From Perkinsela sp. CCAP 1560/9 (lineage: Eukaryota; Protista; Euglenozoa: Kinetoplastea), in the NCBI GenBank assembly GCA_965644495.1, contig CBFFSA010000002.1, forward strand, positions 1,116,001 to 1,180,000: 64,000 bases of DNA, given 5' to 3'. Positions 2,291 through 22,245 of this stretch are shown piece by piece. How positions within the stretch are numbered: the first letter of the stretch is position 1; each line of letters starts with the position of its first letter. A model generated the notes under the pieces. It was not told the DNA's origin. It saw only the letters and a program-made list of their open reading frames with translations, and ran no database searches. The translations under genes and the position numbers were made by a program.

Positions 2291-2698
2291 TTTTTAATAT
2301 ACATACCTTTTGCGGGTCCATGGGTCCCGCATCCAAAATTCAGGATGAACTTAGTGGAGTGACTGCTTCAGATTTTGATGCAAAACATCGGATTTTTTCC
2401 AAATGGGGACCTTAGCTTTTGAACGCAATGGAAATCGCTCGATCAAAGCGTGGCATAATAACTCCTAAGGTGGTGTTACTCGTTGGTGTTCAGGCAAGCT
2501 CGGCAATATGGAGTTTCTTTTCGAGAATATAAAAACAGTAGAGGCCTTCGTAGAGGACGAGTGCAAGAAAGGGCCCCGAGCTTCGAAAGCGAAGCGGCCC
2601 CGTTTTTCAGTTTTTCATTTTCTAGTGTAATACAGTATAAACCACATACCCATTTAACATACCCCCCGGTATGTTATCAAGGTATAGGTATGTTAAAC

Positions 2699-2845
2699 AT
2701 ACAGTTTCTGTACCTTGTTGGTACTTAACCTTAGTTCATCCTTTCTTTCCCCCGCAATGGGCATACTCTTGCTGTATTTTCATGCCCGTTGCCGGTCGGC
2801 GCTAAGGCTGGAACTGTCCCCCTTTATCGCTGAAGAAGGGGACGC
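2699..2845 (+). ncRNA. Spliced leader (SL) RNA gene, 5'-truncated (exon nt 18-39 plus intron)
   Basis: ATACAGTTTCTGTACCTTGTTG|GTAC matches the conserved kinetoplastid SL core (xACAGTTTCTGTAC...TTG|GT). It is followed by stem GCAATGGGCAT/ATGCCCGTTGC and terminal stem GTCCCC/GGGGAC. A homologous copy lies at 17966-18119. Confidence 0.85.
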
Positions 2846-3004
2846 GCCTTCATCCCTTCGCCCCTCCCCGACTCACTCCCCTGGAGTGAATTCTTCTCCC
2901 TCTCGGATTCTTTCCTCCCGACCCGTACCTCTCCGAGAGGGCTAGGCGTCACGGTGGCCTCACTTGAGGACCACTAGACGCGTCCCTCGCTGCCCGCGTT
3001 TACG

Positions 3005-3172
3005 GCTCTCCGCACGTGACGGTCGCCCAGCTCTCCGCACCTCGGCTCTGTCGCAGCTCTCTGCACCCGGATTGCCCCCGAAACTGTAATATGGGGATTA
3101 CGCATCCGGCTCTCTGCACCTGCACATGACAACCGAGCTCTCTGCACCTGGGACGTCAGCTCTCTGCACCCA
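3005..3172 (+). repeat. Imperfect tandem repeat (GCTCTCYGCACC units) in the SL intergenic spacer
   Basis: About 6 copies of GCTCTCTGCACC/GCTCTCCGCAC at roughly 25-55 bp spacing. Confidence 0.7.
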
Positions 3173-3324
3173 TTCTCCTCCAGCGAGGGCAAATCCTCAC
3201 GTGATCCACCCGTCGTATGCGGGTAAGGACAATGTGAGACAAATCTCTGCAATCTAAGTGCTTGAATAAACAAATATAGGTATGTTAAGTAGACTGGTAA
3301 TGAAATAGGAAAGAGAAGAAAATC

Positions 3325-3335
3325 ACTTTCACTGT
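3325..3335 (+). ncRNA. 5' end (nt 1-11) of the next SL exon, broken after nt 11
   Basis: ACTTTCACTGT overlaps CTTTCACTGT seen in the SL copy at 21606-21615 (minus strand). It implies a repeat unit of about 643 bp. Confidence 0.6.
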
Positions 3336-3631
3336 TAGAACCTGTATCTAAAGATATACCGCGCGTAGTACTAAATGCTAAGATGTTATCAAAATACGTT
3401 TAAAAACGCATACAGGAAACATCTTGTTAAAAACGTAAGTGATATTACGGTTGGATTTTGGTACAGTTGCACAATAAAAGCCGTGGGACGAGGGGGGGGG
3501 GTATGTTAAGTGTCGTGGGCCAGAATAACATACCCACCGGTATGTTATCCAAGGTATAGGTATGTTAAACGGGTATGTGGTTTACTAAAGAAAAAAATAT
3601 AAAGGGGGGATCCGGTGGTTTACTATAGAAG

Positions 3632-3730
3632 TACTGTCACCCCCCCCCCCCCCTTTATACTTCCGCCGGTTTCGGTACTTTTGGAAGTATAAAGGGAGGA
3701 ACCTGACTTTCGGAAGTATAAAGGGGGGGC
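3632..3730. repeat. MITE-like end (TACTGTCACCCCC... with inverted CTTTATACTTCCG/CGGAAGTATAAAG)
   Basis: Inverted repeats are visible, and the start resembles the TACTGTCCCCCC TIR family at 43294. Confidence 0.4.
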
Positions 3731-4181
3731 TGATTTTTTGAAAAATCCGCGAAACAATTGTTTTTAAAAAAGGAAAAAGAAAAGAAATGCACCACTTCAC
3801 GGCGCTGGTTTTCTATTATTCTAGCTAAAAATCAATCATCTAATCTCCAAACATGCAGGGCACAATGTTTGCTTCCGTGTTCTTCTTGCACATAGTCAAC
3901 ATACGCTGTATGCTACGCTGTAGTGAATACGTGTCGGGACGATCTACCATTAGAAGCTTTATGGGAAAGTTTTTGAAACGATGTATATTCGCTTTTGCTG
4001 CAGCAGGCGCATGTCCACGCTGGCTTTCATCCCGCCCAGTTCGCCAAGGAGGAGTTCGTTAATTTTTCTTGCATCTCGACATGTTTGTCCTTGTGCAAAC
4101 CCCATCGCGCTTGCGACCACGATAGATTTCCTTTTTTCTGGAAAAATCCGACACCATTTTTCCGGGTGGAGCGCATGGTTC

Positions 4182-4371
4182 GTAATCTTTGTGTTTTCTT
4201 TAGCTTTCCAGGCCGAATTTCTTTTTTAGGCTCTTCGTTAAACGCGGTGTTAGTTTTCAACGCGAAGCGCGCAGCATGAGTGACTTCTAAGTTGAAAACA
4301 ACCACCGCGTTTAACGAAGAGCCTAAAAAAGAAAAGTGCGGTGGTTGTATAACTACCGCTCTACCCTCGAT
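4182..4371 (-). mobile_element. Dispersed repeat copy B (tail hairpin directly followed by palindromic head)
   Basis: 4182-4330 is the reverse complement of 1421-1566. 4337-4371 is the reverse complement of the tail motif ATCGAGGGTAGAGCGGTAGTTATACAACCACCGCA. Confidence 0.85.
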
Positions 4372-4431
4372 ATATCCCCCCCCCAACTAAGGGCGTTGGG
4401 GGGGAGCTTATATCCCCCCCCCAACGCCCAA

Positions 4432-4725
4432 CTAACGTACCCCGCGGCGGTACCATTCCTGTACCGCCGCCTGAACGATCTGGGAGTTGCCCTTCTGAAT
4501 GGCCACCCCAGTAGCCATCAGAAGGTGCGACAGACATCCGTTTCTGTCGGACGCGTAGGCCCTGGCCACCTTGTTAAGAAAGCTCAAGGTGTCTGGGACA
4601 GGTACCCCGTAGGCGGTGAAGGCCAGGGGGTAAAAGTCCATCTCCCCGACGGCCGCCATCTCTTCATGAGAGCGCCGTTTATGGGCCTCCGCCACCCTTA
4701 GCGTGTGGGATGGCGCCGCTGCCTC
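4432..4725 (-). pseudogene. CRE-clade non-LTR retrotransposon C-terminal RLE fragment
   Basis: AEAHKRRSH...FYPLAFTAYG...FLNKVA...GVAIQKGN matches the CRE-type endonuclease tail pattern (AExxKxxKY, FxPLAFExxG, SVAIQRGN). Confidence 0.6.
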
Positions 4726-4810
4726 TTTCCGGCTATACGAGATGATCTCGTTCATACATGTATGTCAAGGTCGGCACGAGTAATACTCACTAAATGAGGA
4801 GACTCTTTGA

Positions 4811-5045
4811 TTGGGCGGGGCCCGCGTGTGCCACGTACTCGACCGGATAGTTCCGCATCGACACACACTGTTCACTGACGCAACCTCAAAAGGATTGGGG
4901 GGCGTGTTGTACATTGATTATGGTAGAATAGCAATTGCTGGAGATACATGGGACGAAGAATTTGCGTATGGGGTGAATCAAGCCGAGACCAGAGCGGTTA
5001 GACTCGCATTCGAGCACTTTGAAAGGAATTTTAATCCGGATACAT
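4811..5045 (+). pseudogene. DIRS/TATE-like RNase H fragment
   Basis: LFTDATSKGLGGV...W...VNQAETRAVRLAF resembles tyrosine-recombinase retroelement RNase H (FTDASxxGWGA...INxLExxAV). Confidence 0.6.
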
Positions 5046-5053
5046 GTACATGT

Positions 5054-5141
5054 GAGGGGCTGCGGGTGAGGACCAAGACGAGATCACGGGAGATCACATG
5101 AGAACACGTGAGATCATGCGAGATCATACCCACAGTCCCTC
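5054..5141. mobile_element. Sola-like MITE (GAG...CTC termini, 4-bp TSD ATGT) with internal 10-bp GAGATCAC repeats
   Basis: The ends GAGGGGCTGCGGGT and ACCCACAGTCCCTC are inverted. ATGT occurs at 5050-5053 and 5142-5145. A related copy is at 12327. Confidence 0.6.
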
Positions 5142-5206
5142 ATGTGTAACTCTATTTGTTGACAACATATCCAGATGGGTACATAGTGAAAATAAAGTTC
5201 AATCAT

Positions 5207-5454
5207 TTCTCTTTCGGAATTATTTTCGTACCATCTACGCTAAGGGCTTGCAGTTTATCAGGTAAAGTGAAATCGTTGACATTACCGTAAAGCTCCGAGT
5301 TATTGTCAAGGCAAAACCATGACAATCGTGGTGGAAGGTTATCAAATCGCACCAATCCGGAAAACTGATTATTAGAACAGTCGAGAGCATCAAGTTCGAA
5401 AGGTAAGTGTTGTAAATTAAGTGGTCCTGTAAACTTGTTGTATGATAGTTTAAT
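5207..5454 (-). pseudogene. 3' half of an LRR gene split by a retrotransposon
   Basis: Manual translation IKLSYNKFTGPLNLQHLPFELDALDCSNNQFSG...LSVDGTKIIPKEK* continues the LPRSMIN repeat that ends near 7293. Confidence 0.8.
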
Positions 5455-5459
5455 TTATC

Positions 5460-7273
5460 ATACCTTTATAAGGCAGAGAATATGCGGATAGGCCTGGGGG
5501 GCGCATATGACGCTGCCCAGACCTATCTTTTACAGACGTTATACCCGTCCTTCTGTCCAAACGGCAGACTCGCGGTTCTGCCAGATAATGAAACTGCCTC
5601 GAAGGGCGGTCTGCATTAGACTTTCTCGACATTTTTCCGCAAGCTTTGTGTCCTCGTCAAAGAGGAGATTGAGGTTTCGACAAGATGTGAGTAACGAGCC
5701 GCGGGCTCCCACTTCGAATACAACAAGGGTCGTCCTAGGGTGATTAATGCGTCGTTCATGGAAGAGAGCATTATATTTACGGGATTTGCCCTCGTGCGCC
5801 TGAGACTGGTTCTCTTCCCAGGGCACAGTGAGCTCAATGATGAACTCACTTCCATCCTTAAGTGTAATCAAACCGTCGGGGCGAAGAAGGTCCTCACGGG
5901 TGCCGAGCCATGCCGGGGCATTCCTAAATCCGGGGATATCTAGGTGTACGCTCTTGGTATACGGCGAACGCAGCAAGTGTTTTCCGAGCTCTTCAAGTAA
6001 CATGTCATGACGGAGGGTATATCTCCCTTGCTGAAGGGACTCTTTGCACCCCGAGAGCACGTGCCTTGTTGTTTGAGGTTCGAGTTTACATATGGGACAT
6101 GTTACACTCGCACGCCGGAGACCCCAAAGCCGAAGATTGGTTCTGGATGGTAGGGGTGAAAGCGTTAGTACTGAAGCTGCGAAGCGAGAAAGTTTTTCAC
6201 TGTTGAGGTTGTTCAGGGCCGCTGAGAACTCTTTCGCGAGATCAGCCTCGGAGGGGAGGCTCCACTATTTTGCTGCTGTCGGTGCCCGTCTCTGAAGCTG
6301 ATTTATGACGTAAGATTCATGGTGATCACGGGCTATCTGTTGCGCCTTCCGCGCGTCATGAAGGTGTTGAATGGCGTCAGCGCTTGGACGAATATAACCA
6401 GAGGATCGTTTTTCTTCTTCTTGCTTGATTCGGGCTCGTAGTGCCGCCTGTATCGATGGGTCCCGCCACTTGTGCATCTGTGTTAAGGCTAGGATAGAGC
6501 ATTCGGACCACAGCTTGGATAAACTTTTAAGGTTCCACCCTCGTTCAGTATAAAGAATTTCGGTGCAAGTCGTGGATGCTGCATTGATCCATTTCTTAAG
6601 GTGACGTGTAATTCTTTTCTGCAATCGCAATACAAAGTTGAAAGTGACACACGGGTGAACGGTGAGGGCGTAGCGCAGACGGGATACGATCGCTCTGTTG
6701 TAGATCCAAAGTTTTTCGGGGAGACTGTGTGCACTCTCGTCGACATTCCGAAGCCATGTTCTTAGTCTGACATCCAGCTTTTTGAAAAGTTCTTTCGCTT
6801 GCTGTGCTCCTGGTGCTATGGTCATTCCAAGAAAAGTGCTTCCACGGTCACATATATGTGGTATCGCTTTGCCTTCGATACTGAGTCTCGGCTTCCTGGT
6901 CATGTACCCCGGGTGCTCACTGCCTTCACGCATGGACATGCACTGTGTACGGCTCTTGTCTACGTTGATTGAGAGTCCTATTCGTCTCAGTGCAGTTTCG
7001 AGTGTGTTGGTCGCGTGCTGCATGTCGGTATCGCTGCTAGTCAGTATCGTCAGGTCGTCAACGTAGGCTTTCAGGAAATGCCTTGGAGTATCTGGGTAGT
7101 CAAGGCCATACCGGGGGCACGATTGCTTGAGGTATCGTAGTACAGTTTCCATCACTAAGTTGAAAATTATGGGCGACAGGGTATCACCTTGTAGTACGCC
7201 TCTGTGTATCGGTATAGCACGTGACAAACCTTCGACACACTTAATACGCATTTCCGCATGTGAATACATGCTT
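5460..7273 (-). mobile_element. 5'-truncated HERO-like RLE retrotransposon, family 1 (RT C-half, CCHC zinc knuckle, RLE), with one in-frame TAG at 6265-6267
   Basis: 6701-7273 is near-identical to 18126-18697. Motifs: GVLQGDTLSP, YVDD, CPIC...HVLSGC, GRYTLRHD, RPDG, IIELTVPWEEN. The 5539-6060 ORF is in the same frame as 6265-7686. Confidence 0.92.
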
Positions 7274-7291
7274 CTATGTATGTTCTCATCT

Positions 7292-7874
7292 ATGTTAATC
7301 ATAGATCGCGGTAGACTGGTGAGGTCGATTTCACCGGATAAATTGGTGTCCGACATTAATAAGAGGAAAATATGATTCCCCAGGCAGGTTAAATCTATAT
7401 TCCCCTGAAAAAAGTTGTTACACAGGATAAGTTCCTCCATGTTTTGTGGTAAATGGTGGAATTCCAAAGAGCCTGAAAATTGGTTACAGTTTATGGCAAA
7501 CTCATCAAGTTCAGCCGGCAACATATCGAACAGTACTTTTCCCGTAAGATCGTTGCAAGATGCTTTAAATTTGTGTAACGTGCGTAATGTGTAACGCCAT
7601 TGCAGTGATCCTTTCAGTCGATTACTCCCAAATATGCCGAATGTTTCCCAAATAATGTTCGTTACTTGTTGTCCATCACAATCCACACCTTTCCACTCAC
7701 ATGCTGGCGTTGATGTATTCCACGATGGGTCTGGGTTCTCAATATCAGCGGCAAATCGTGCGAGCTCATATTCTTGTGGTTATTCGTTCCTCGCACCCTA
7801 CTGGGAAGTCTACGTGTTGCATCGACATTTGACACATCAGCTGTGCAACACAGATAATACACTAAGGATATCAT
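7292..7874 (-). pseudogene. 5' half of an LRR gene (frameshifted and retrotransposon-interrupted)
   Basis: RVRGTN/PQEYELARF...SWNTSTPACEWKGVDC followed by LPxxLxxLxLxxNxF repeats. There is a frameshift near 7780. Confidence 0.8.
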
Positions 7875-14682: not shown

Positions 14683-15223
14683 TTTTTTAGGCTCTTCGTT
14701 AAACGCGGTGGTTGTTTTCAACATAGAAGTCACTAATGCTGCGCGCTTCGCGTTGAAAACTACCACTGCGAACCTAAAAAAGAAAAATTGGTAAAAGATC
14801 ATGAATAATCTATTTTTTTGGGTGAAAAAGCTGGATTTTTCGGCGAAAATTGCAAAATTTCAACCCGAATTTGGACCGTTTTAGATGCCTTACCAGTAGG
14901 GGTAGAAGGCGAATCTGTCGAAAAAAACGTCGCAGAATGGTAGCTGAGGTCCCAAACTCTTAAAATACGTTTTAGGAGTAGATTTTGGAAAAATAATATT
15001 TTTACTTTTTTTTGGTCACCCCAAAACTTTCGGAAATTTTGACCTTGTCGGACCCCTCCTGCGCGTACCAGGGGGGGGGGAATTATCGCCGCGGCCTACT
15101 CTACCACTTCCCTGCGCTCGATTTTGAAAAGCAAAAAATTCGAAAAAAAATTTCTTGACGTATGCCCCCCCCTGGACCCCCCATTTTATTCATTTTTTTT
15201 TTTCAATTTTGGACCACTGGAGC
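14683..15223 (+). mobile_element. Dispersed repeat copy C (3'-truncated at a retrotransposon junction)
   Basis: Partial palindromic head plus body homologous to 47627-48225. It ends at TTTTGGACCACTGGAGC. Confidence 0.8.
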
Positions 15224-16790
15224 AACAGCACTTTCGAGATTGGGGCTGACACTGAACATTGGGAAATGCAGAGTTCAGCACATGTCCGTGGCAACAGGCA
15301 GTGGATATATGACCAGACGCCCGCAGATTATGGCCAAAGGCACGCCTATTCCTCACATATGCGATAAAGGAAGTATGTTTTTGGGCATGACACTGGCACC
15401 CGGCGCACAACAAGGCAAAATTACCTTTCAAACTGTTAAGGCGAAACTATCAGGTTGGTTGAGCAGAATCTCTGAGAGCGCTCACGACCCATCCGCTAAG
15501 CTTTGGATATACAATCACGTCATCATTGCTCGCTTGCGCTATGTACTAACAATCAACCCCGGACTTTCTTTTACTCATATGCTTCGACAGCAGAAACTAG
15601 CGACCCGGCACATCCGAAAGTGGCTAAATCTCGCTAAAGCCTCAACGAGTGAGCTCCTTTACTCTGAACGTGGTTGGGCCCTCATGAGCCTGTCCAAATT
15701 GTGGCTACACTGCACAGCCCAAAACCTAAATCAAATGAATGCTTCTCGGGATCCGGCGGTGCAGCACGCATTGCGAATTAAAATTGAGAACGAGAAAAGG
15801 CAGCGTTCACGCGGGCATGTGCGCCCGGCAGCCGACCTGTGCCACCTAATAGGAGACTCTAACGAAATGCGCCGTAAAATCAATACCGAGCATGAGGCGC
15901 ATCTTACACAAGCGGTATAACGGAGAGCACCTATCGCTGCCAGATGGTTCAACGATGCATCGGAGGAAAGCGTGGCGAAAGACTTCAGGTTCGAAAAACA
16001 TCAGGTCGACGCACCTGACGCGATTTGTCTCCTCTGTCCTCACACAGGCCCCGCTACCTACCAGGGCCGCAATTCACCGCTGGGGCATATCAACCCACAC
16101 AGACATCAAATGCCCGCTATGCAAGACAGAGGTACAAACCCCAAGGCACATTCTCGCGGGATGCTGAGTTGCTCTAGATCAAGGGCGTTACACTTTCAGA
16201 CACGACTTCATCTTACGGGCCCTAGCTTACCATGTAAGCGAGTCCCCCCATACAGCTCTCTCTCATTTCGACCTACCTGGCATGCGACGCCCTCCAACGT
16301 GGCTAGCCGACAATGACGGTATGCTGCGTCCGGACGGGTGGGTAAAGCTAAGGGACGGGAAAGAGTTCATTATTGAACTAACTTGCCCATGGGAGGAGAA
16401 TATGCAGGCCGCGCACGAGCGGAAAATGCTGAAATACCACCACCTGTGGCATACGCGAAAAGAAAATCATCCCGAAACATACCTATTCGCCCTAGAGATT
16501 GGGGCTCGCGGAAGTCTCCAAGACTCGGCGAGTAAATTAGATATGCTCTTCTGCGAGGAAACAAAGCTTGCCAAGGAGTGTCGCCAACACTTGGTGACGA
16601 GAGCATTTAGGGGGAGTTTCACTATATACCAAAATCGGGACCGCGCAAACTGGAACCCCATGGATGTTTGTATTTCGGATGAGTAAACAGGAATAGCCAA
16701 ACACGTCGTATGCTTGTACGGGATCATATGTTATGTGATCCCAAGCTATTTGACTTAATCTCTACAGTATAACTGTATGAATCCTCCTCC
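15224..16790 (+). mobile_element. 5'-truncated, decayed HERO-like RLE retrotransposon, family 2
   Basis: Protein is colinear with family 1 (KLWIYN, YSERGW, CPLC...HILAGC, GRYTFRHD, RPDGW, IIELTCPWEEN) but has stops and a frameshift. Its 3' UTR matches 42400-42570. Confidence 0.88.
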
Positions 16791-17058
16791 TTAGAGAGGG
16801 ATCGCTTTTGCGGCATAATAGTGAGCTGAAAAACAAAAAAAAACACGGAAAAAACTGCAAAAATTGAAAAATCTGCAACTTTTAGGTGGGTAAAAAACCT
16901 TTAAAAAAATATCTTTTTCAAATTTGTTTTCTTTTAACGTGATAATAGCGCCAAAACATAGATCTCTGCGAGAGCTCTCGAATGCGCTATTATTTTCCAA
17001 AATTGCGCAAACATTGCTAATTTTAGACCCCCCCCCCAGCATCTGATTTGCACCCCTG
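16791..17058 (-). mobile_element. Probable Tc1/mariner-type terminus (TA-CAGGGGTG...) truncating the IS30-like ORF
   Basis: The minus strand reads TACAGGGGTGCAAATCAGATG from 17060. No partner TIR was found. Confidence 0.35.
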
Positions 17059-17060
17059 TA

Positions 17061-17394
17061 TGGTAGAAGTCGAGGCGGTACGACAGCTACGGATCGTATT
17101 TGCAATCTGTTCCGGGCTGTGCTTCTTTTGAAGTCGAGAGCTGACTTCCTCTTCCAAAAGGCCTTGTATCTTGTGAGGCTTGACCTTTTTACACGAGAGG
17201 CGTCTTTTCGAAATGCGCTGTGCCCTCTTCCCCTCATAGCGCTGACCCCTTCTTGCATTACGCGCCAACTCGCGACAAACAGTGCTGTGACTTTTGCCAA
17301 TTATGCGAGCTATGATTCGCCGACTCTCGCCAGATGTAAAGAGTGATTGAATACGATTACGATCGTAATGACTGAGTCTTGAATAATGGCGCAT
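17061..17394 (-). mobile_element. IS30-family transposase N-terminal HTH fragment
   Basis: YSRLSHYDRNRIQSL...GESRRIIARIIGKSHSTVCRELARN...Y...AQ...L...HSPEQIA follows the IS30 HTH pattern (RELxRN, WSPEQI). IR-like motifs GGTGCAYTGGAAATGA occur at 17449 and 17488. Confidence 0.75.
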
Positions 17395-17669
17395 TTGTAG
17401 TATAGATCCGAAGGATAATATAAAATAATACTTCTTTAAATAATTGATGGTGCATTGGAAATGAGAATACAGTTTTTAAGAAAAAGTGGTGCACTGGAAA
17501 TGACAAGAAAATTATTTTTTAGGAAAAAAAGTGGTGCGTTGGTTTTGATGTTCATGCGCTCGTTGGCGCAGAGATACAGCCCTTGATGCGACAGCCGATA
17601 TCATCGGCACAATCCGTATTGACGGATGTCGCACCAAGGGGGTTTAGCTCGGACTCTGTCGGTAGAGGG

Positions 17670-17798
17670 GGTCCAGGCAACTCGCCCTCTCTTTACGCAG
17701 CCGGAGGGGCGCACTGCAACCAACTCGGTCCCAGTCGGAAGAGGTGGTCCAGGCAACTCACCATCTCTTTACGCAGCCGGAGGGGCGCACTGCAACCG
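17670..17798 (-). repeat. Two-copy tandem repeat (about 76-bp period) in the SL spacer
   Basis: GGTCCAGGCAACTC...TCTTTACGCAGCCGGAGGGGCGCACTGCAACC is present twice. Confidence 0.8.
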
Positions 17799-17965
17799 AC
17801 CGCTGCCTCGCGATAAGACGAGGCAGAGCCACGCCCAGTGGTCCTCAAGGGAGGCCACCATGGCGCATGGCTCCCCGGGAAGAAAAGGGCGCGAAGGGAA
17901 GAAAGCCGGGGAGGGAAGAAAACCCACTCAAGGAGTGAGCCGGGGAGGGGTGATGGGGTGGAAGC

Positions 17966-18119
17966 GCGTCCCCTACTTCGCCGAGAAAGAGGGACAGTTT
18001 CGGCCTTAGTGCCGGCCGGCAACGGGCATATAAAACAGTAAGATTATGCCCGTTGCCGGGGAAAGAAAAGATGAACTAAAGGGAAAATGTACAACAAGGT
18101 ACAGAAACTGTATCTTTAT
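17966..18119 (-). ncRNA. SL RNA gene remnant (exon nt 12-39 plus intron) at the 3' junction of the retrotransposon
   Basis: The minus strand reads ATAAAGATACAGTTTCTGTACCTTGTTG TAC. It has a perfect 15-bp stem CCGGCAACGGGCATA/TATGCCCGTTGCCGG. Homology to 2699-2975 extends to about 17837. Confidence 0.85.
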
Positions 18120-18124
18120 CCAAT

Positions 18125-21100
18125 CTAGATCCAAAGTTTTTCGGGGAGACTGTGTGCACTCTCGTCGACATTCCGAAGCCATGTTCTTAGTCTGACATCC
18201 AGATTTTTGAAAAGTTCTTTCGCTTGCTGTGCTCCTGGTGCTATGGTCATTCCAAGAAAAGTGCTTCCACGGTCACATATATGTGGTATCGCTTTGCCTT
18301 CGATATTGAGTCTCGGCTTCCTGGTCATGTAACCCGGGTGCTCACTGCCTTCACGCATGGACATGCACTGTGTACGGCTCTTGTCTACGTTGATTGAGAG
18401 TCCTATTCGTCTCAGTGCAGTTTCGAGTGTGTTGGTCGCGTGCTGCATGTCGGTATCGCTGCTAGTCAGTATCGTCAGGTCGTCAACGTGGGCTTTCAGG
18501 AAATGCCTTGGAGTATCTGGGTAGTCAAGGCCATACCGGGGGCACGATTGCTTGAGGTATCGTAGTACAGTTTCCATCACTAAGTTGAAAATTATGGGCG
18601 ACAGGGTATCACCTTGTAGTACGCCTCTGTGTATCGGTATAGCACGTGACAAACCTTCGACACACTTAATACGCATTTCCGCATGTGAATACATGCTTTC
18701 AACGTAGGACACGATTTGTGGCGAGACGTTTGCCCATCGCAGTGCCTCGAAGATGATGTTATGGGGGACCGAGCCGAATGCATTGCTGAGATCAAACTGC
18801 GTGAGACAATATTGCCTTTTGTTTCGGCGGTAGTATTGTAGTATTTCGGAGAGAGCTTGCGTGTGTTCCAGTGTGCCACTCATCTTCGGAAGAAAGCCTT
18901 TTTGAACGCTTGTATCTAGGAGGCCGGAGGACACGGTATGCGTCAAAATTTGGTGTCCGATCATGCTATTGAAAAGTTTGCCTAGAGCGCTAGTCAGGGA
19001 GATAGGCCTCCAGTTTTTCGGGATGTGTTTTTGGCCTCTTTTGTGAATGAGTTTAACTACGGCGGAGGACCAGCATGGCGGGCAGACGCCGTAGCGCAGA
19101 AGATCATTAAACGTGTTCGCTATACGGGGGTACAGGTATTTGCATTGTTTTAGAAGTGCGTTTGTAATCGTATCACGCCCTGGCGCGCTTGCGCTTCTTT
19201 TGCTGCTGAGCGCGTCTGCGACATCTTGCGCGGTCAGTGGAGACCATTCCATTTCGTTGATGGGTAGAGGACCAAGTACGTTGTTCGGCGGCAGGCGATG
19301 CTCTTCGGCGGGAGGTGCTGTGCTTTCTGTGAAATATTTTTCTATCGTAGGTAAATCGCATTCAGGATATTCGGCGGTGGCGGAGGTCGAGGGGCGGTCC
19401 AAGGCCTCGGATGCTGCTGTCCACGGGTTCCGCGTGAATCTGCTATGGGCCCATTGTCTTTCTAGCTGTTTCCTATGTGCTTTGGCCTCTTCTGTGTATG
19501 TTTTCTCTAGCTTCTCACTTTCCTTAATGCAGCGACGGAGCTCTTGGCGTTCCGTTCCGTGTGTGTAGCGTAGTGATTTCTTTTGGTTGCGTATGTGTTT
19601 CGTCATTTCGTGGGCTGCATTTTCAGACGAAAGTGTCCGGTGCTTGAATCGGGCGTGTCCGCGTTTCGATCGCGTGAGGAAACCTTTAGTGGGGTTAATC
19701 TCTTGTGCAATTTCGTATGCCGCCACTGCCAGAGAGGCACCCAGGAGTTCTGCGTTTTTCACTGCGATTTCCGGGGTGTCTACTATTGGATATTGCAGCC
19801 TTCGGCATGCATCGTATGCCTTGTTTTCAACCGCCTTCCATTGATCGTCGTTAAGCTTTAGGCACATTTTTCCTCCTGTTATGGTTTTGTGTTGTTCAAG
19901 CAGATGGAGGCGCTCCCTTTCGCTGGTTTCATCCCATGATGGAACTCGAAGTTCCGTAGTGTGCGAAGGAGGAGGAAGAGGAGAAGGTCGGATGAGGGGC
20001 TCATTGTACCTAAGCGGTCCATATATCTTACAGCATTTATGTAGACAGCGTAGCTTGGCCGAGTATCGGTGACGACATGGTTCCATGTGTACGGTGTTCT
20101 GTGGGTAATGCGCTGCACTGCTAGGCGTCGCGTCAGGGAGTGGCGCAGGGTTGTGCATAGTGCTATCTTTGTTGTCAGTGCACGTCGCATCCGTGATTTG
20201 CACAGTATGTTGGTTCCCGTTTGTTGGTCCGTTGATGCTAGTATTGGGAAGGCGGTAGAGGTTTATAACGTTACGCATGGCCCAACCAGCCAATTTAGCA
20301 GCTTTCCGTAGGAAATCACTATCGTTGTCGTTGAGGTTTGGTGTTACGGAGTTCTGGTTGACGTCGGCCCCCTCTGTTTGGGTTCCCTCGGCAGGTGGGA
20401 CCATTTGGACACCAGGTGGAGGTTGTGTTGCCGGGTTTAACCCGCGTTCTAAAGTTGTGTGAGCGCCCTCCCGTGATATTGCGTTGCATAGCTTCGTTTG
20501 TAGATTTTCATTTGTGGAAGTCGCGGAAATTGGAAAGTCCAGATGCGAAGATTTAATGCCTCGTTTACAACATAGATGTCCGCACGTAGCTTTGTTCTTG
20601 CAGGAATGACGACATGGATGCGGGGCGGAAGGTTCATCATGTACGGTAGGTTTGCGGTGACCGTTCGACGCATGTGTGTTGCATTTTGTATGTGTCGCAG
20701 GTTCCGAAGAGGTGCTTTCCGGCGTATATTTACTTGGATCTCCTGGGTTGGTGTTATTTGCGGTTCCTTCTGGGACGATCTCAGGTGGCAGTGCTCCTTC
20801 TGATGAGCAATATGTAGCGTCCTCACTCGGCAGCGGTCCATAGATTTTACAGCACTTGTGAGCACAGGAGAGTTTGCTCAAGCAGCGGTGCTTGCATGGT
20901 CCCTTGTGTTGATCAGTTTTACCCTTCTGGGGCTTTGGCGTTCGTGGGGGAGCGATTTTATGAGGAGATTCTTCTATCCTGCGCGGCTTCTCGTATTCCG
21001 CGGTTTCAGTGCTTGGTGTTTCCTGGTTTCTTATGAGCTCGATTTTTATGTGCTTCAGTCCCGATATTTCTCTTCCCTGTATGGCCTTCAGGGCTGCCTT

Positions 21101-21550
21101 ATTTAGCGTGCTTGGGGTGGAATACTTGTCTCGCAGGCTGAGGGCAGGGTCGGTGTGCATCGAGACCCAGTTTGGGTGCAGGGAGATGGTGTAGGGGTGT
21201 TCATTCCTCGTAACCTTTATATAGTCGCACGCGTTATGCTCCACGAGCTCCTCAAAGGTGGTGTGTTCAGCTACGAGATCGTGTGCTGATGCACACTTAC
21301 TCAGCAGTTTCGTGATAGCTACTTCCGCACCTTGTCGGGATGGAATTCTTTGTCTGACTATGGACCATTGGCTCGCGGTCTTAATGTCCGGGAAATACGT
21401 CCAATGCAGATCAGTGAGGCGTCGTATCTTAACGGGCCGTGATCTGCTGTGGACGAAGTGCAGGGTTTGCGTCTGTACGCCGCCGGAAGCTCGAGGGAGG
21501 TCAGGCAGCGCATCGTCAACATTCCGCGGAGAAGTGGGATTGTCGGACAT
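18125..21550 (-). mobile_element. HERO-like RLE non-LTR retrotransposon, family 1: 5'-complete, 3'-truncated ORF (1141 aa from ATG) with three Cys/His motifs and RT
   Basis: RT motifs SAPGRD, WRPISL, DTSVQKGF...EH, DLSNAFGSVPH, GVLQGDTLSP and HVDD (YVDD in the sister copy). The ORF stops after EKLWI, where the sister copy continues. Confidence 0.92.
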
Positions 21551-21577
21551 GTTGGAGATACAGTTTAGAAAAAAAAA

Positions 21578-21636
21578 CAACAAGGTACAGAAACTGTATC
21601 TTTATACAGTGAAAGAAACTGTATCTTTATACAGTG
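21578..21636 (-). other. SL exon copies fused to the retrotransposon 5' end (nt 6-27 followed by nt 2-39, sharing one C)
   Basis: The minus strand reads CACTGTATAAAGATACAGTTTC-TTTCACTGTATAAAGATACAGTTTCTGTACCTTGTTG, then a T tract and CTAAACTGTATCTCCAAC-ATG. No GTA intron follows the exon. Confidence 0.9.
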
Positions 21637-22245
21637 CTCCAGCCGCAAAGGAAGCTTGGAAAAGTTCAACTCCCCCGAGAAACGATTCCTCTGCAGATAG
21701 AGGTGGACCAAACCCTGCGGCAGAGAATCCAACGTGATCATCCCGAAGAGGCGGTTCTCGGACAAATTCAACATTCTCAGTGCAGGGGGAAGTTGACTCA
21801 AGTCGGTGGGACCGGTGAATTGGTTTCCCGGGATGTTAAGACGCACCAGCGCCGGGGGAAGGCTCGCGAGCTTGACCTCTTCTTGAAAAAGATTATCACA
21901 CAGCACCACCTCCTCCAGGGAGACGGGAAGCGTGTCCCAGGGAATGCCCCCTGTGAGAAATGTTTTTGTGAGGTAGAGCATTTGCGTGGTTGCGGGAAGC
22001 GCCCTGAACTCCAAGTATCCTCTGTAAAAGTCGCGCAGGACAACCGCGCGCAGCCTTCCCTGGGGGTCACATCGAAACCCCTCCCAGGTACACTCCGAGA
22101 CGGGCTCACGCCCACACCATGTGAAACGTAAGAGCACCCAGCTCGAGTGGGGGTTCTCAACGCGATGTACGAGACGCTCCATTTGCTCGTCCTGAGGAAG
22201 CAGCGCTGCACTGACCTTTCCGCGACGAACGTGGACATCGTCCAC
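21637..22245 (-). pseudogene. LRR gene truncated by the SL/retrotransposon insertion
   Basis: RRGKVSAALLPQDEQMERL, a CTWEGFRC cap and 5-6 LRRs ending LPLRLE at the SL junction. Confidence 0.8.

What the first reader, a model, noticed from the sequence alone, without database searches (positions are those of the whole stretch)
17966..21636. HERO-like (non-CRE) retrotransposon tied to the spliced leader at both ends: SL-capped 5' end and 3' junction at SL nt 11/12
Seen: the element is bracketed by a 29-bp direct repeat (18091-18119 and 21577-21605), which is SL nt 12-39 plus T. The 3' side enters a genomic SL gene with intron and spacer exactly at nt 12, after 6 extra nt (GATTGG). A second SL copy is broken after nt 11 (3335). 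The 5' side has the SL exon ending precisely at the splice donor, with no intron, 27 nt before the ATG. Known: the trypanosomatid SL-specific elements SLACS, CZAR and CRE1 are CRE clade and insert at SL nt 11/12. This RT/RLE (DTSVQKGF, DLSNAFGSVPH, GRYTLRHD, IELTVPWEEN) instead resembles the HERO clade, which I do not know to target SL genes. Inference: an independent lineage has converged on the SL site. Its RNA is trans-spliced, and the acquired SL gives homology for 5' joining, producing an apparent TSD equal to nt 12-39.
Basis: partly seen in the sequence, partly recalled or inferred. Interest (0 to 1): 0.92.

Follow-up and report, generated by a model that had tools for sequence, protein, structure and literature searches.

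The report
Broken retrotransposon fused to small retroposon
The stretch is a dead, 3'-truncated copy of a jumping gene that starts with a DNA copy of the cell's spliced leader and normally lands in leucine-rich-repeat genes; its broken end is joined to a second, small leader-headed retroposon, not to a spliced-leader gene, so there is no sign that it targets the leader gene.

Summary
The sequence facts hold: a 29-nt direct repeat (18091-18119 / 21577-21605), six extra bases at 18120-18125, and an intron-less spliced-leader (SL) piece 27 nt before the ATG.

The reading of the 3' side does not hold. The real SL RNA gene (297-bp array on another contig) has a different 5' end and a different intron. 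The supposed "SL gene with intron and spacer" at 17543-18120 is a discrete 577-bp non-coding retroposon, here called X. X has at least 40 near-identical copies, and its own head usually starts at SL nt 10-12.

The element, here called F1, is 4.7 kb when complete and has one 1528-aa ORF with RT, CCHC and PD-(D/E)XK domains. The window copy is cut at 18126 and lacks the endonuclease. None of the eight complete 3' ends in the genome lies next to SL sequence. Most lie at one codon position of leucine-rich-repeat (LRR) genes.

All six full-length 5' ends carry SL heads, but of differing length, so the SL belongs to the inserted unit.

F1 belongs to the R2 group. Its nearest kin are same-genome families, a prokinetoplastid transcript, and then teleost and metagenome elements. 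"HERO" could not be tested because no labelled references were available.

The scan has already met SL-headed, LRR-homing retrotransposons on other DNA of this genome.

The parts
21641..22245 (-). 3' part of a leucine-rich-repeat (LRR) gene, the host gene in which F1 sits. Its coding sequence ends ...LPLRLE(H) directly at the SL-like head.
   Evidence: Pfam finds LRR_1, LRR_8 and LRR_4 on ORF 21565-22245. The sequence was read.
21606..21636 (-). Extra partial SL-like copy (CACTGT + SL nt 11-27 + TTT), followed by CACTGT. It is one unit of a 25-nt tandem duplication at the head of F1.
   Evidence: Read. The word CACTGTATAAAGATACAGTTTC occurs twice here and, with 0-1 mismatch, only twice more in the genome.
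21578..21605 (-).
   Evidence: The true SL comes from the tandem gene array.
21551..21577 (-). F1 5' UTR: a run of 9 T followed by CTAAACTGTATCTCCAAC.
   Evidence: The same UTR follows the SL head in all six full-length copies.
18125..21550 (-). F1 ORF, truncated to 1141 aa of the full 1528 aa. The stop codon TAG (18127-18125) is created by the junction. The CCHC and PD-(D/E)XK endonuclease domains are missing.
   Evidence: The intact natural ORF is L048:390-4973.
18329..19048 (-). Reverse transcriptase domain.
   Evidence: Pfam RVT_1 at aa 835-1074, E = 7e-31.
18121..18125 (-). Five filler bases (GATTG) between the broken F1 end (last F1 base 18126) and the head of X (G at 18120 = SL nt 10).
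   Evidence: The junction word is unique in the genome.
17543..18120 (-). Retroposon X: 577-578 bp, non-coding. It consists of an SL head (nt 10-38), a 17-nt GT...AG segment, a hairpin module, two 76-nt repeats, and the 3' end ...GAACATCAAAA.
   Evidence: At least 40 copies at 86-100% identity with the same ends; 389 candidates.
16790..17548 (-). IS30-like DNA transposon derivative. Its first ~13 terminal bases are missing, and it is joined to the 3' end of X through a TCAA microhomology.
5449..7273 (-). Second F1 copy. It is 5'-truncated and inserted in an LRR gene. It carries the 3' 1.26 kb that copy 1 lacks (CCHC, RLE, 3' UTR) and has an in-frame stop at 6265-6267.
5449..5538 (-). F1 3' UTR with a strong hairpin and no poly-A tail. 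The element ends ...GATAAATTAAA.
   Evidence: Fold: -32.5 kcal/mol, z = -5.2. The end is defined by eight copies.
2694..2975 (+). Diverged X-like copy (78% identical to 18118-17837).

Best explanation
F1 is a non-LTR retrotransposon of the R2 group, that is, one with a restriction-like endonuclease (RLE). It belongs to a kinetoplastid-type protist.

Anatomy of a complete copy (4.7 kb):
- A 5'-truncated DNA copy of the spliced leader (SL).
- A T-run and a short UTR.
- One 1528-aa ORF: three Cys/His motifs, RT, CCHC, PD-(D/E)XK nuclease.
- A 90-nt 3' UTR with a stable hairpin and no poly-A tail.

How it works:
- Shown: new copies lie mostly at one codon position of LRR genes (just before xLxxNxFxG), in the direction of the gene. 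The SL piece is part of the inserted unit.
- Inferred: copies are made by target-primed reverse transcription of an RNA that bears the leader.

The window copy is a dead relic. It keeps the normal 5' junction with an LRR gene but is cut at 18126, losing 387 aa that include the endonuclease.

The broken end is joined, through five extra bases, to the normal 5' end of X. X is a different, 577-bp non-coding retroposon whose own SL head usually starts at SL nt 10-12. The 3' end of X is in turn joined, by a 4-nt microhomology, to an IS30-like transposon that lacks its first ~13 bases.

Both junctions of X are therefore irregular. The likeliest history is that X was inserted or captured at a break downstream of an intact F1 copy. 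That event deleted the F1 3' part, the rest of the LRR repeat and the tip of the IS30-like element. This step is inferred, with about even odds against the alternatives.

The 29-nt 'direct repeat' is two independent SL heads. It is not a target-site duplication, and no SL gene is involved.
For: True SL gene and its intron. Only the 297-bp array is a bona fide SL gene; the other intron-bearing copies are A-tailed retropseudogenes, and none is interrupted at nt 11/12.

X is a discrete repeat:
- Fixed ends, at least 40 copies.
- Its heads start at SL nt 8-17, with a mode at 10-12.
- Its flanks are LRR codons or (TG)n.

The F1 family:
- 11 3' ends and 6 5' ends in the genome.
- Eight complete 3' ends end ...AAATTAAA. 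Five or six are followed by xLxxNxFxG codons, and none by SL sequence.
- Six SL heads of different length.
- Intact 1528-aa ORFs in L048 and L049.
- Removing the element plus its head restores an LRR ORF.

Truncation of copy 1.

Domains and kinship:
- RVT_1 and zf-RVT.
- Alignment with R2 proteins from RT through RLE, E = 4e-32.
- Invariant CCHC, PD, E-x-T and K columns.
- 3' hairpin, z = -5.2.

Junctions:
- The IS30-like terminus is truncated, with TCAA overlap.
- The junction word is unique in the genome.
- It is present in a second assembly.
- A second composite of the same build exists: the 5' 320 nt of another SL-headed element joined to the SL head of a full-length F1 on contig 9.
Against: - There is no RNA evidence that F1 is transcribed or trans-spliced. 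The only possible RNA run holds just an SL-bearing contig.
- No SL-less master copy with an AG acceptor before the T-run was found, so how the head is renewed is open.
- No empty-site allele is available, so the order of events at 18120 and 17543-17548 cannot be shown.
- Two of eight complete 3' ends are not at recognisable LRR codons.
- SL gene arrays are probably collapsed in the assembly, so insertions inside unassembled SL genes cannot be excluded.
- Short-read contigs break at the repeats and neither confirm nor refute the 18120 junction.
- The second assembly is 100% identical over 10.2 kb and may rest on the same reads.
Confidence: 0.82

Rival explanations
1. One reading: an SL-site-specific element. 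F1 nicks SL genes at nt 11/12 like SLACS, CZAR and CRE. Its 3' end therefore abuts SL nt 12-39 plus intron and spacer, and its trans-spliced 5' SL supplies homology for 5' joining, giving an apparent duplication of nt 12-39.
For: The 29-nt repeat is exact. The 3' flank begins at about the position where CRE-clade elements cut the SL gene. Many SL heads in this genome start near nt 10-12.
Against: - The flank is retroposon X, not an SL gene. The true intron is different.
- F1 is truncated at this junction, which its own target-primed reverse transcription cannot produce.
- None of eight complete F1 3' ends is next to SL sequence.
- No intron-bearing SL copy is interrupted.
- X starts at nt 10-12 at dozens of sites where no F1 is present.
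Confidence: 0.03
2. Single-event chimera by template jumping. Reverse transcription began on X RNA. At the 5' end of X (SL nt 10) the enzyme added a few bases and jumped onto a broken F1 RNA, copied it to its SL head, and the composite was joined to the LRR gene.
For: - X is full length from its usual 5' end, and five untemplated-looking bases lie at the joint.
- The F1 5' junction lies at a normal LRR codon site.
- A second composite of the same build exists on contig 9.
- End-to-end X-X' dimers exist.
- End-to-end template jumping with added bases is an established in vitro property of the R2 reverse transcriptase (my knowledge of Bibillo and Eickbush's work; not checked here).
Against: - The acceptor would be entered at an internal position of F1 RNA, not at a 3' end.
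- The 3' junction of X is not at an LRR site. It lies inside a truncated IS30-like terminus with microhomology, which fits break repair better.
- No empty site is available.
Confidence: 0.25
3. Assembly chimera. The join at 18120 is a misassembly through the repeated SL word.
For: The SL word occurs more than 500 times in the genome. Short-read contigs stop at 18126 and run on into the canonical F1 sequence.
Against: - F1 has no SL homology at 18126, and five unique filler bases lie at the joint, so a repeat-mediated misjoin would not land there.
- The junction-made 1141-aa ORF is also present on a 16.6-kb contig of a second assembly.
- Short-read contigs collapse the roughly 10 F1 copies, so their path says little.
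Confidence: 0.05

Closest known systems
CRE clade (SLACS, CZAR, CRE1, CRE2) of trypanosomatids
   Same: A kinetoplastid-type host. A single ORF with RT followed by a CCHC motif and a restriction-like endonuclease. An association with spliced-leader sequence.
   Different: CRE elements insert at one fixed position of SL RNA genes, end in poly-A and make target-site duplications (PMC12278014). F1 has no poly-A tail, is never found in an SL gene, lands in LRR codons, and carries the SL as its own 5' head rather than as its flank.
HERO clade of RLE non-LTR retrotransposons
   Same: RT plus C-terminal RLE. HERO is described as mostly non-specific, with some microsatellite-specific families (PMC4640811). 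A sister family of F1 sits in (TG)n. The nearest named relatives of F1 are teleost elements that are not R2 proper.
   Different: Membership rests on RT phylogeny against Repbase references, which I could not run. The R4/Rex6 clade is not excluded. F1 forms a separate, well-supported kinetoplastid cluster. It also has a 770-aa N-terminal part with three Cys/His motifs.
R2 elements (Bombyx R2Bm, zebra finch R2Tg)
   Same: Alignable from RT through CCHC and RLE (E = 4e-32 for F1, 1e-107 with a profile). Structured 3' UTR without poly-A. Site-specific insertion into a repeated target.
   Different: The target is a protein-coding repeat, not 28S rDNA. No Myb or C2H2 N-terminus was detected. The 5' end is an SL copy rather than a ribozyme-processed co-transcript end.
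Spliced-leader relics of dinoflagellate retrogenes
   Same: A DNA-encoded, intron-less, often 5'-truncated SL at the head of a retro-copied unit (PMC5585692, PMC6050394).
   Different: Here the tagged units are the retrotransposons themselves and their non-coding partners, in a kinetoplastid-type genome. The neat full-SL plus relict-SL stacks are not seen in F1.
RHS genes as hot spots for ingi/RIME in Trypanosoma brucei
   Same: A multigene family repeatedly hit by non-LTR retrotransposons at a fixed position in the coding sequence.
   Different: A different gene family (LRR), a different retrotransposon group (RLE rather than APE type), and SL heads. This comparison is from my own knowledge and was not tested here.

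Membership tests
CRE clade (SLACS/CZAR/CRE1/CRE2) | Insertion at one fixed position (nt 11/12) of SL RNA genes | tested here: not met
   None of eight complete 3' ends lies next to SL sequence. The eight intron-bearing SL copies are uninterrupted at nt 11/12. The flank at 18120 is retroposon X.
CRE clade (SLACS/CZAR/CRE1/CRE2) | Poly-A tail at the 3' end (PMC12278014) | tested here: not met
   All complete copies end ...GGTATGATAAATTAAA, followed by unrelated flank.
CRE clade (SLACS/CZAR/CRE1/CRE2) | RT groups with SLACS/CZAR/CRE in a phylogeny | not testable with these tools
   No labelled CRE sequence could be obtained. None appeared among 51 + 113 hits. The word prefilter may have missed them.
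CRE clade (SLACS/CZAR/CRE1/CRE2) | RT followed by an RLE motif in one ORF | tested here: met
HERO clade | RT groups with HERO references (Repbase) | not testable with these tools
   Only unlabelled relatives were available. F1 is closer to teleost elements (about 200 bits) than to R2 (114 bits). Those teleost elements are far from vertebrate R2 (93 bits). Tree.
HERO clade | No target specificity, or microsatellite targets (PMC4640811) | tested here: inconclusive
   F1 prefers an LRR codon site. A sister family and some X copies sit in (TG)n.
R2 group (RLE-bearing non-LTR retrotransposons) | RT, then CCHC, then a PD-(D/E)XK nuclease, C-terminal in a single ORF | tested here: met
   Invariant C1343, C1346, H1355, C1360, P1416-D1417, E1431-x-T1433 and K1447 in a 16-sequence alignment. 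R2 structures align over aa 772-1478.
R2 group (RLE-bearing non-LTR retrotransposons) | Structured 3' UTR used instead of poly-A | tested here: met
   Hairpin, -32.5 kcal/mol, z = -5.2. Its function is inferred.
R2 clade proper | Insertion in 28S rDNA; N-terminal zinc finger and Myb | tested here: not met
   The flanks are LRR genes. Pfam finds no Myb or C2H2.
SL-tagged retro-copies (dinoflagellate type) | Intron-less SL at the 5' end, inside the inserted unit | tested here: met
   Six of six full-length F1 copies. Excision in silico restores the LRR frame.
SL-tagged retro-copies (dinoflagellate type) | RNA intermediate shown to be trans-spliced | not testable with these tools
   No RNA run covers F1.

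The most novel reading that the evidence does not exclude
Two composites have the same build: F1(5' part)-X in this window, and Y(5' part)-F1 on contig 9. Together with the end-to-end X-X' dimers, they may be natural products of template jumping by an R2-like reverse transcriptase. The jump would go from the leader-marked 5' end of one RNA onto another element's RNA.

If so, SL heads mark true RNA 5' ends, and this genome keeps a readable record of in vivo template switching. It would also mean these elements depend on host trans-splicing to define their 5' ends.
Probability: 0.25. Interest if true: 0.7.

Novelty: new variant of a known kind. Interest (0 to 1): 0.5.

Why it matters
The striking claim, a second retrotransposon lineage converging on the SL nt 11/12 site, is not borne out.

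What remains is still unusual:
- An R2-group retrotransposon lineage in a kinetoplastid-type protist whose copies begin with the cell's own spliced leader.
- A target that is a fixed codon position of a protein-coding repeat.

In trypanosomatids only the INGI, CRE, VIPER and TATE clades are on record (PMC12278014). SL relics are documented mainly for dinoflagellate retrogenes. I found no report of SL-headed retrotransposons in kinetoplastids.

This window adds three cautions for anyone annotating this genome:
- SL-like sequence followed by GTAC... is a retroposon head, not an SL gene.
- Heads start at nt 10-12 for reasons unrelated to CRE-type targeting.
- Irregular composites between elements occur.

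Tried and rejected
- Rfam at gathering thresholds found nothing in the window, so there is no SL RNA and no HDV-like ribozyme call.
- Clade naming failed:
  - The sequence search, the profile search and cluster look-ups gave no labelled CRE, HERO, R4 or NeSL member.
  - The ESM Atlas features were uninformative.
  - PDB chains cannot be fed to the alignment tools.
- Reads: the four holder runs are short-read contigs of one study that break at the repeats. They neither bridge nor refute 18120. The possible RNA run has no F1.
- A literal search of the literature for the SL sequence found nothing. The acoel genome preprint was irrelevant.
- I considered X to be an SL RNA-derived SINE. I rejected this because nothing after GTA resembles the true intron.
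- I considered X to have been inserted into F1 at an LRR-like pseudo-site. The F1 sequence at the break (..WIY|NRA..) is out of register with the LRR site, and the F1 remainder is absent downstream.
Intact natural copies (L048, L049) served instead.
Full report
**What is in the sequence**

The element's sense strand is the minus strand of the window. From 5' to 3' it reads as follows.
- An LRR gene ends at ..LPLRLE(H) (21641-22245).
- A partial SL-like copy follows, and then SL nt 11-38 (21605-21578).
- Next come nine T and an 18-nt UTR, then the ATG at 21550.
- The ORF of 1141 aa runs to 18125, with RVT_1 at aa 835-1074.
- After six bases (GATTGG) the word ATAAAGATACAG...CCTTGTTGT recurs (18119-18091).

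Chance expectation for the repeat is zero.

**The true spliced leader**

The 22-nt SL core occurs 527 times in this 21-Mb, 110-contig genome, on both strands. Only eight copies carry a kinetoplastid-type intron (GTATGAGAAGC).
- One locus is a 297-bp tandem array reading (T)AACTTTAACGATAAAGATACAGTTTCTGTACCTTGTTG|GTATGAG...
- The others start at SL nt 3-5 and end in an A-run, so they are retro-copied SL RNAs.
- None is interrupted at nt 11/12.

The word spanning 3335/3336 is present intact at 13 places, so it is an internal part of another repeat.

At the head of F1 the sequence is a 25-nt tandem duplication of CACTGT + SL nt 11-27. The word is nearly unique to this place.

**The 3' flank is a retroposon, not an SL gene**

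The sequence after the second SL word (GTACATTTTCCC.., with one G missing here) has nothing in common with the true intron beyond GTA. It belongs to a discrete 577-578-bp unit that I call X (18120->17543).
- A genome search scored 40 of 389 candidates. Most are 92-100% identical.
- They begin at query base 6-10 and end at base 582-584.
- Across 27 sampled X-type heads the SL part starts at nt 8-17, mostly 10-12.
- X ends ..GAACATCAAAA.
- It lies mostly between ..LPxxLxxL and xLxxNxFxG codons of LRR genes, once inside (TG)n, and twice directly in front of another X-like unit.

So 'entry at SL nt 12' is simply the usual 5' end of X, seen at dozens of sites without any F1.

**F1 is truncated here**

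A second copy in the window (7273->5449) is 99.3% identical to 18698-18126 and then continues for 1.26 kb. Genome searches found 11 3' ends and 6 5' ends.

Intact copies (L048 and L049) are 4.7 kb with a 1528-aa ORF. Their features:
- Three CxHxCx5CxHxCC motifs in the N-terminal part.
- RT.
- A zf-RVT-like CCHC.
- PD..ExT..K residues that are invariant across a 16-sequence alignment.
- A 90-nt 3' UTR that folds into a strong hairpin (z = -5.2).
- No poly-A tail.

The window copy stops at aa 1141. Its stop codon is made by the junction itself, and it has no endonuclease. An element's own target-primed reverse transcription starts at its 3' end and cannot give a 3' truncation.

**Where F1 really lands**

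The eight complete 3' ends all finish ..GGTATGATAAATTAAA. Their flanks are as follows.
- Codons such as LSYNKFTG, LTDNRFNG, LGYNMFTG, CVNSKIFG and VIKTGLSG, in five or six cases.
- Unrelated sequence in two cases.
- SL sequence in none.

Removing one intact copy together with its SL head restores a continuous LRR reading frame. This agrees with earlier notes of this scan on other DNA of the genome (s1-689782, s1-682848), which I re-tested only on this family.

**The 5' SL head**

All six full-length 5' ends carry an intron-less SL piece directly before the T-run. The piece starts at nt 5, 7, 11, 11 (with ACTGT), 17 and about 21, and there are small slips at the SL/T-run border. The upstream flanks differ right up to the head.

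Whether it is renewed by trans-splicing each round is open.
- No copy has an AG acceptor before the T-run.
- The first AG downstream lies inside the ORF.
- No RNA data cover F1.

**The junctions of X in this window**

On the 5' side, F1 ends at 18126 and five bases (GATTG) precede the head of X.

On the 3' side, X runs into an IS30-like DNA transposon. Its genuine terminus (GGCGGATTGTCAACACC.. in five other copies) lacks about 13 bases here, and a TCAA overlap lies at the join.

Both joins are irregular. I therefore favour the insertion or capture of an X cDNA at a break or nick downstream of a once-complete F1. This would have removed the F1 3' part, the rest of the LRR repeat and the transposon tip.

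A single-event chimera by template jumping remains possible.
- A composite of the same build exists on contig 9. There the first 320 nt of another SL-headed element are joined to the SL head of a full-length F1 whose 3' flank is a normal LRR site.
- X-X' dimers also exist.

An assembly error is unlikely. F1 has no SL homology at the break, the junction word is unique, and a second assembly carries the same 1141-aa ORF. That assembly may not be independent, however, and the short-read contigs are uninformative.

**Kinship**

- F1 aligns with solved R2 proteins from RT through RLE (114 bits).
- Its closest relatives are other families of the same organism (45-60% identity). One of them sits in (TG)n with an SL head starting TAAAG.
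- Next comes a transcript of the prokinetoplastid isolate PhF-6 (51% identity).
- Then come metagenome and teleost proteins (24-31% over the whole RT-RLE).
- A teleost relative scores only 93 bits against vertebrate R2, so this wider group is not R2 proper.
- In a tree, F1 falls in an eight-member kinetoplastid cluster (SH-aLRT 100). Its sister is a metagenome cluster, followed by the teleost cluster. One row labelled amphioxus fell with the APE outgroup.

No labelled CRE, HERO, R4 or NeSL sequence could be obtained. 'HERO-like' therefore stays a plausible but untested label, and 'non-CRE' rests on the missing poly-A tail, the missing SL-gene targeting and the vertebrate kin.

**Literature**

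- CRE elements are defined by a fixed SL-gene site, a poly-A tail and TSDs. Trypanosomatids are credited with four TE clades only (PMC12278014).
- HERO is described as mostly non-specific, with some microsatellite-specific families (PMC4640811).
- SL relics on retro-copies are well known in dinoflagellates (PMC5585692, PMC6050394).
- I found no report of SL-headed retrotransposons in kinetoplastids.

**Verdict**

The SL-targeting interpretation is rejected. The idea of a leader-bearing RNA intermediate is supported.

The object is a dead composite of two SL-headed retroelements in an LRR gene. The wider phenomenon is interesting but has already been found by this scan elsewhere in the genome.

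Noticed in passing
window 18074-18091 versus L045 (contig 9), minus strand, bases 1167-1480: In X the SL is followed by a 17-nt segment with GT..polypyrimidine..AG ends (GTACATTTTCCCTTTAG) and then a hairpin module starting TTCATC. In another, protein-coding SL-headed element the SL is joined directly to TTCATC. This looks like two alternative trans-splice acceptors. It would leave X with a usable acceptor behind its head.
   Followed up: partly
G000:C5:475401-476259 and G000:C12:162177-162963: X is followed without a gap by the SL head (from about nt 16) of a diverged X-like unit, giving head-to-tail dimers.
   Followed up: partly
L064, L094-L097 (G000 C2:801598, C20:10940, C25:23931, C49:34382, C86:12043): These are retro-copied SL RNAs. 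The SL starts at nt 3-5, the true intron follows, and the unit ends in an A-run at the RNA's 3' end.
   Followed up: partly
L066 (ENA contig ctg3877l), bases 2900-7700: A sister family (P0005, 45% identical to F1) is inserted in a (TG)n microsatellite and has an SL head starting TAAAG. Its last 21 bases recur inside X (X bases 448-468).
   Followed up: partly
window 15162-16790 (+): A further 5'-truncated RLE retrotransposon of a related family, in the opposite orientation. Its 3' end abuts the other end of the IS30-like element.
   Followed up: no
window 16790-17548: An IS30-like DNA transposon derivative with an HTH-bearing ORF fragment (17394->17023). The family has hundreds of candidate copies in the genome (386 in the first look).
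   Followed up: partly
window 2638-3584: An X-like unit lies inside a longer repeat bounded by GGTATGTTA-type inverted motifs. The same arrangement occurs at G000:C1:1323352 (L008).
   Followed up: no
G000:C1:2477646-2492945 and L009-L018: Other families end in poly-A and are followed at once by an SL head starting at nt 3. They form head-to-tail arrays with a period of about 5093 bp.
   Followed up: no
window 20027-20896 (F1 aa about 219-508): Three copies of a CxHxCx5CxHxCC Cys/His motif in the N-terminal part of F1. There is no Pfam match.
   Followed up: no
G000:C13:22183-24651: Contig 13 repeats the window's left part. The F1 copy 2 3' end and its LRR flank are 100% identical, which suggests a segmental duplication or a second haplotype contig.
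   Followed up: no
L059, L060 and window 21606-21636: Three SL heads have ACTGT instead of TTAACG in front of ATAAAG. This may be a minor SL variant or a recurrent copying slip.
   Followed up: no
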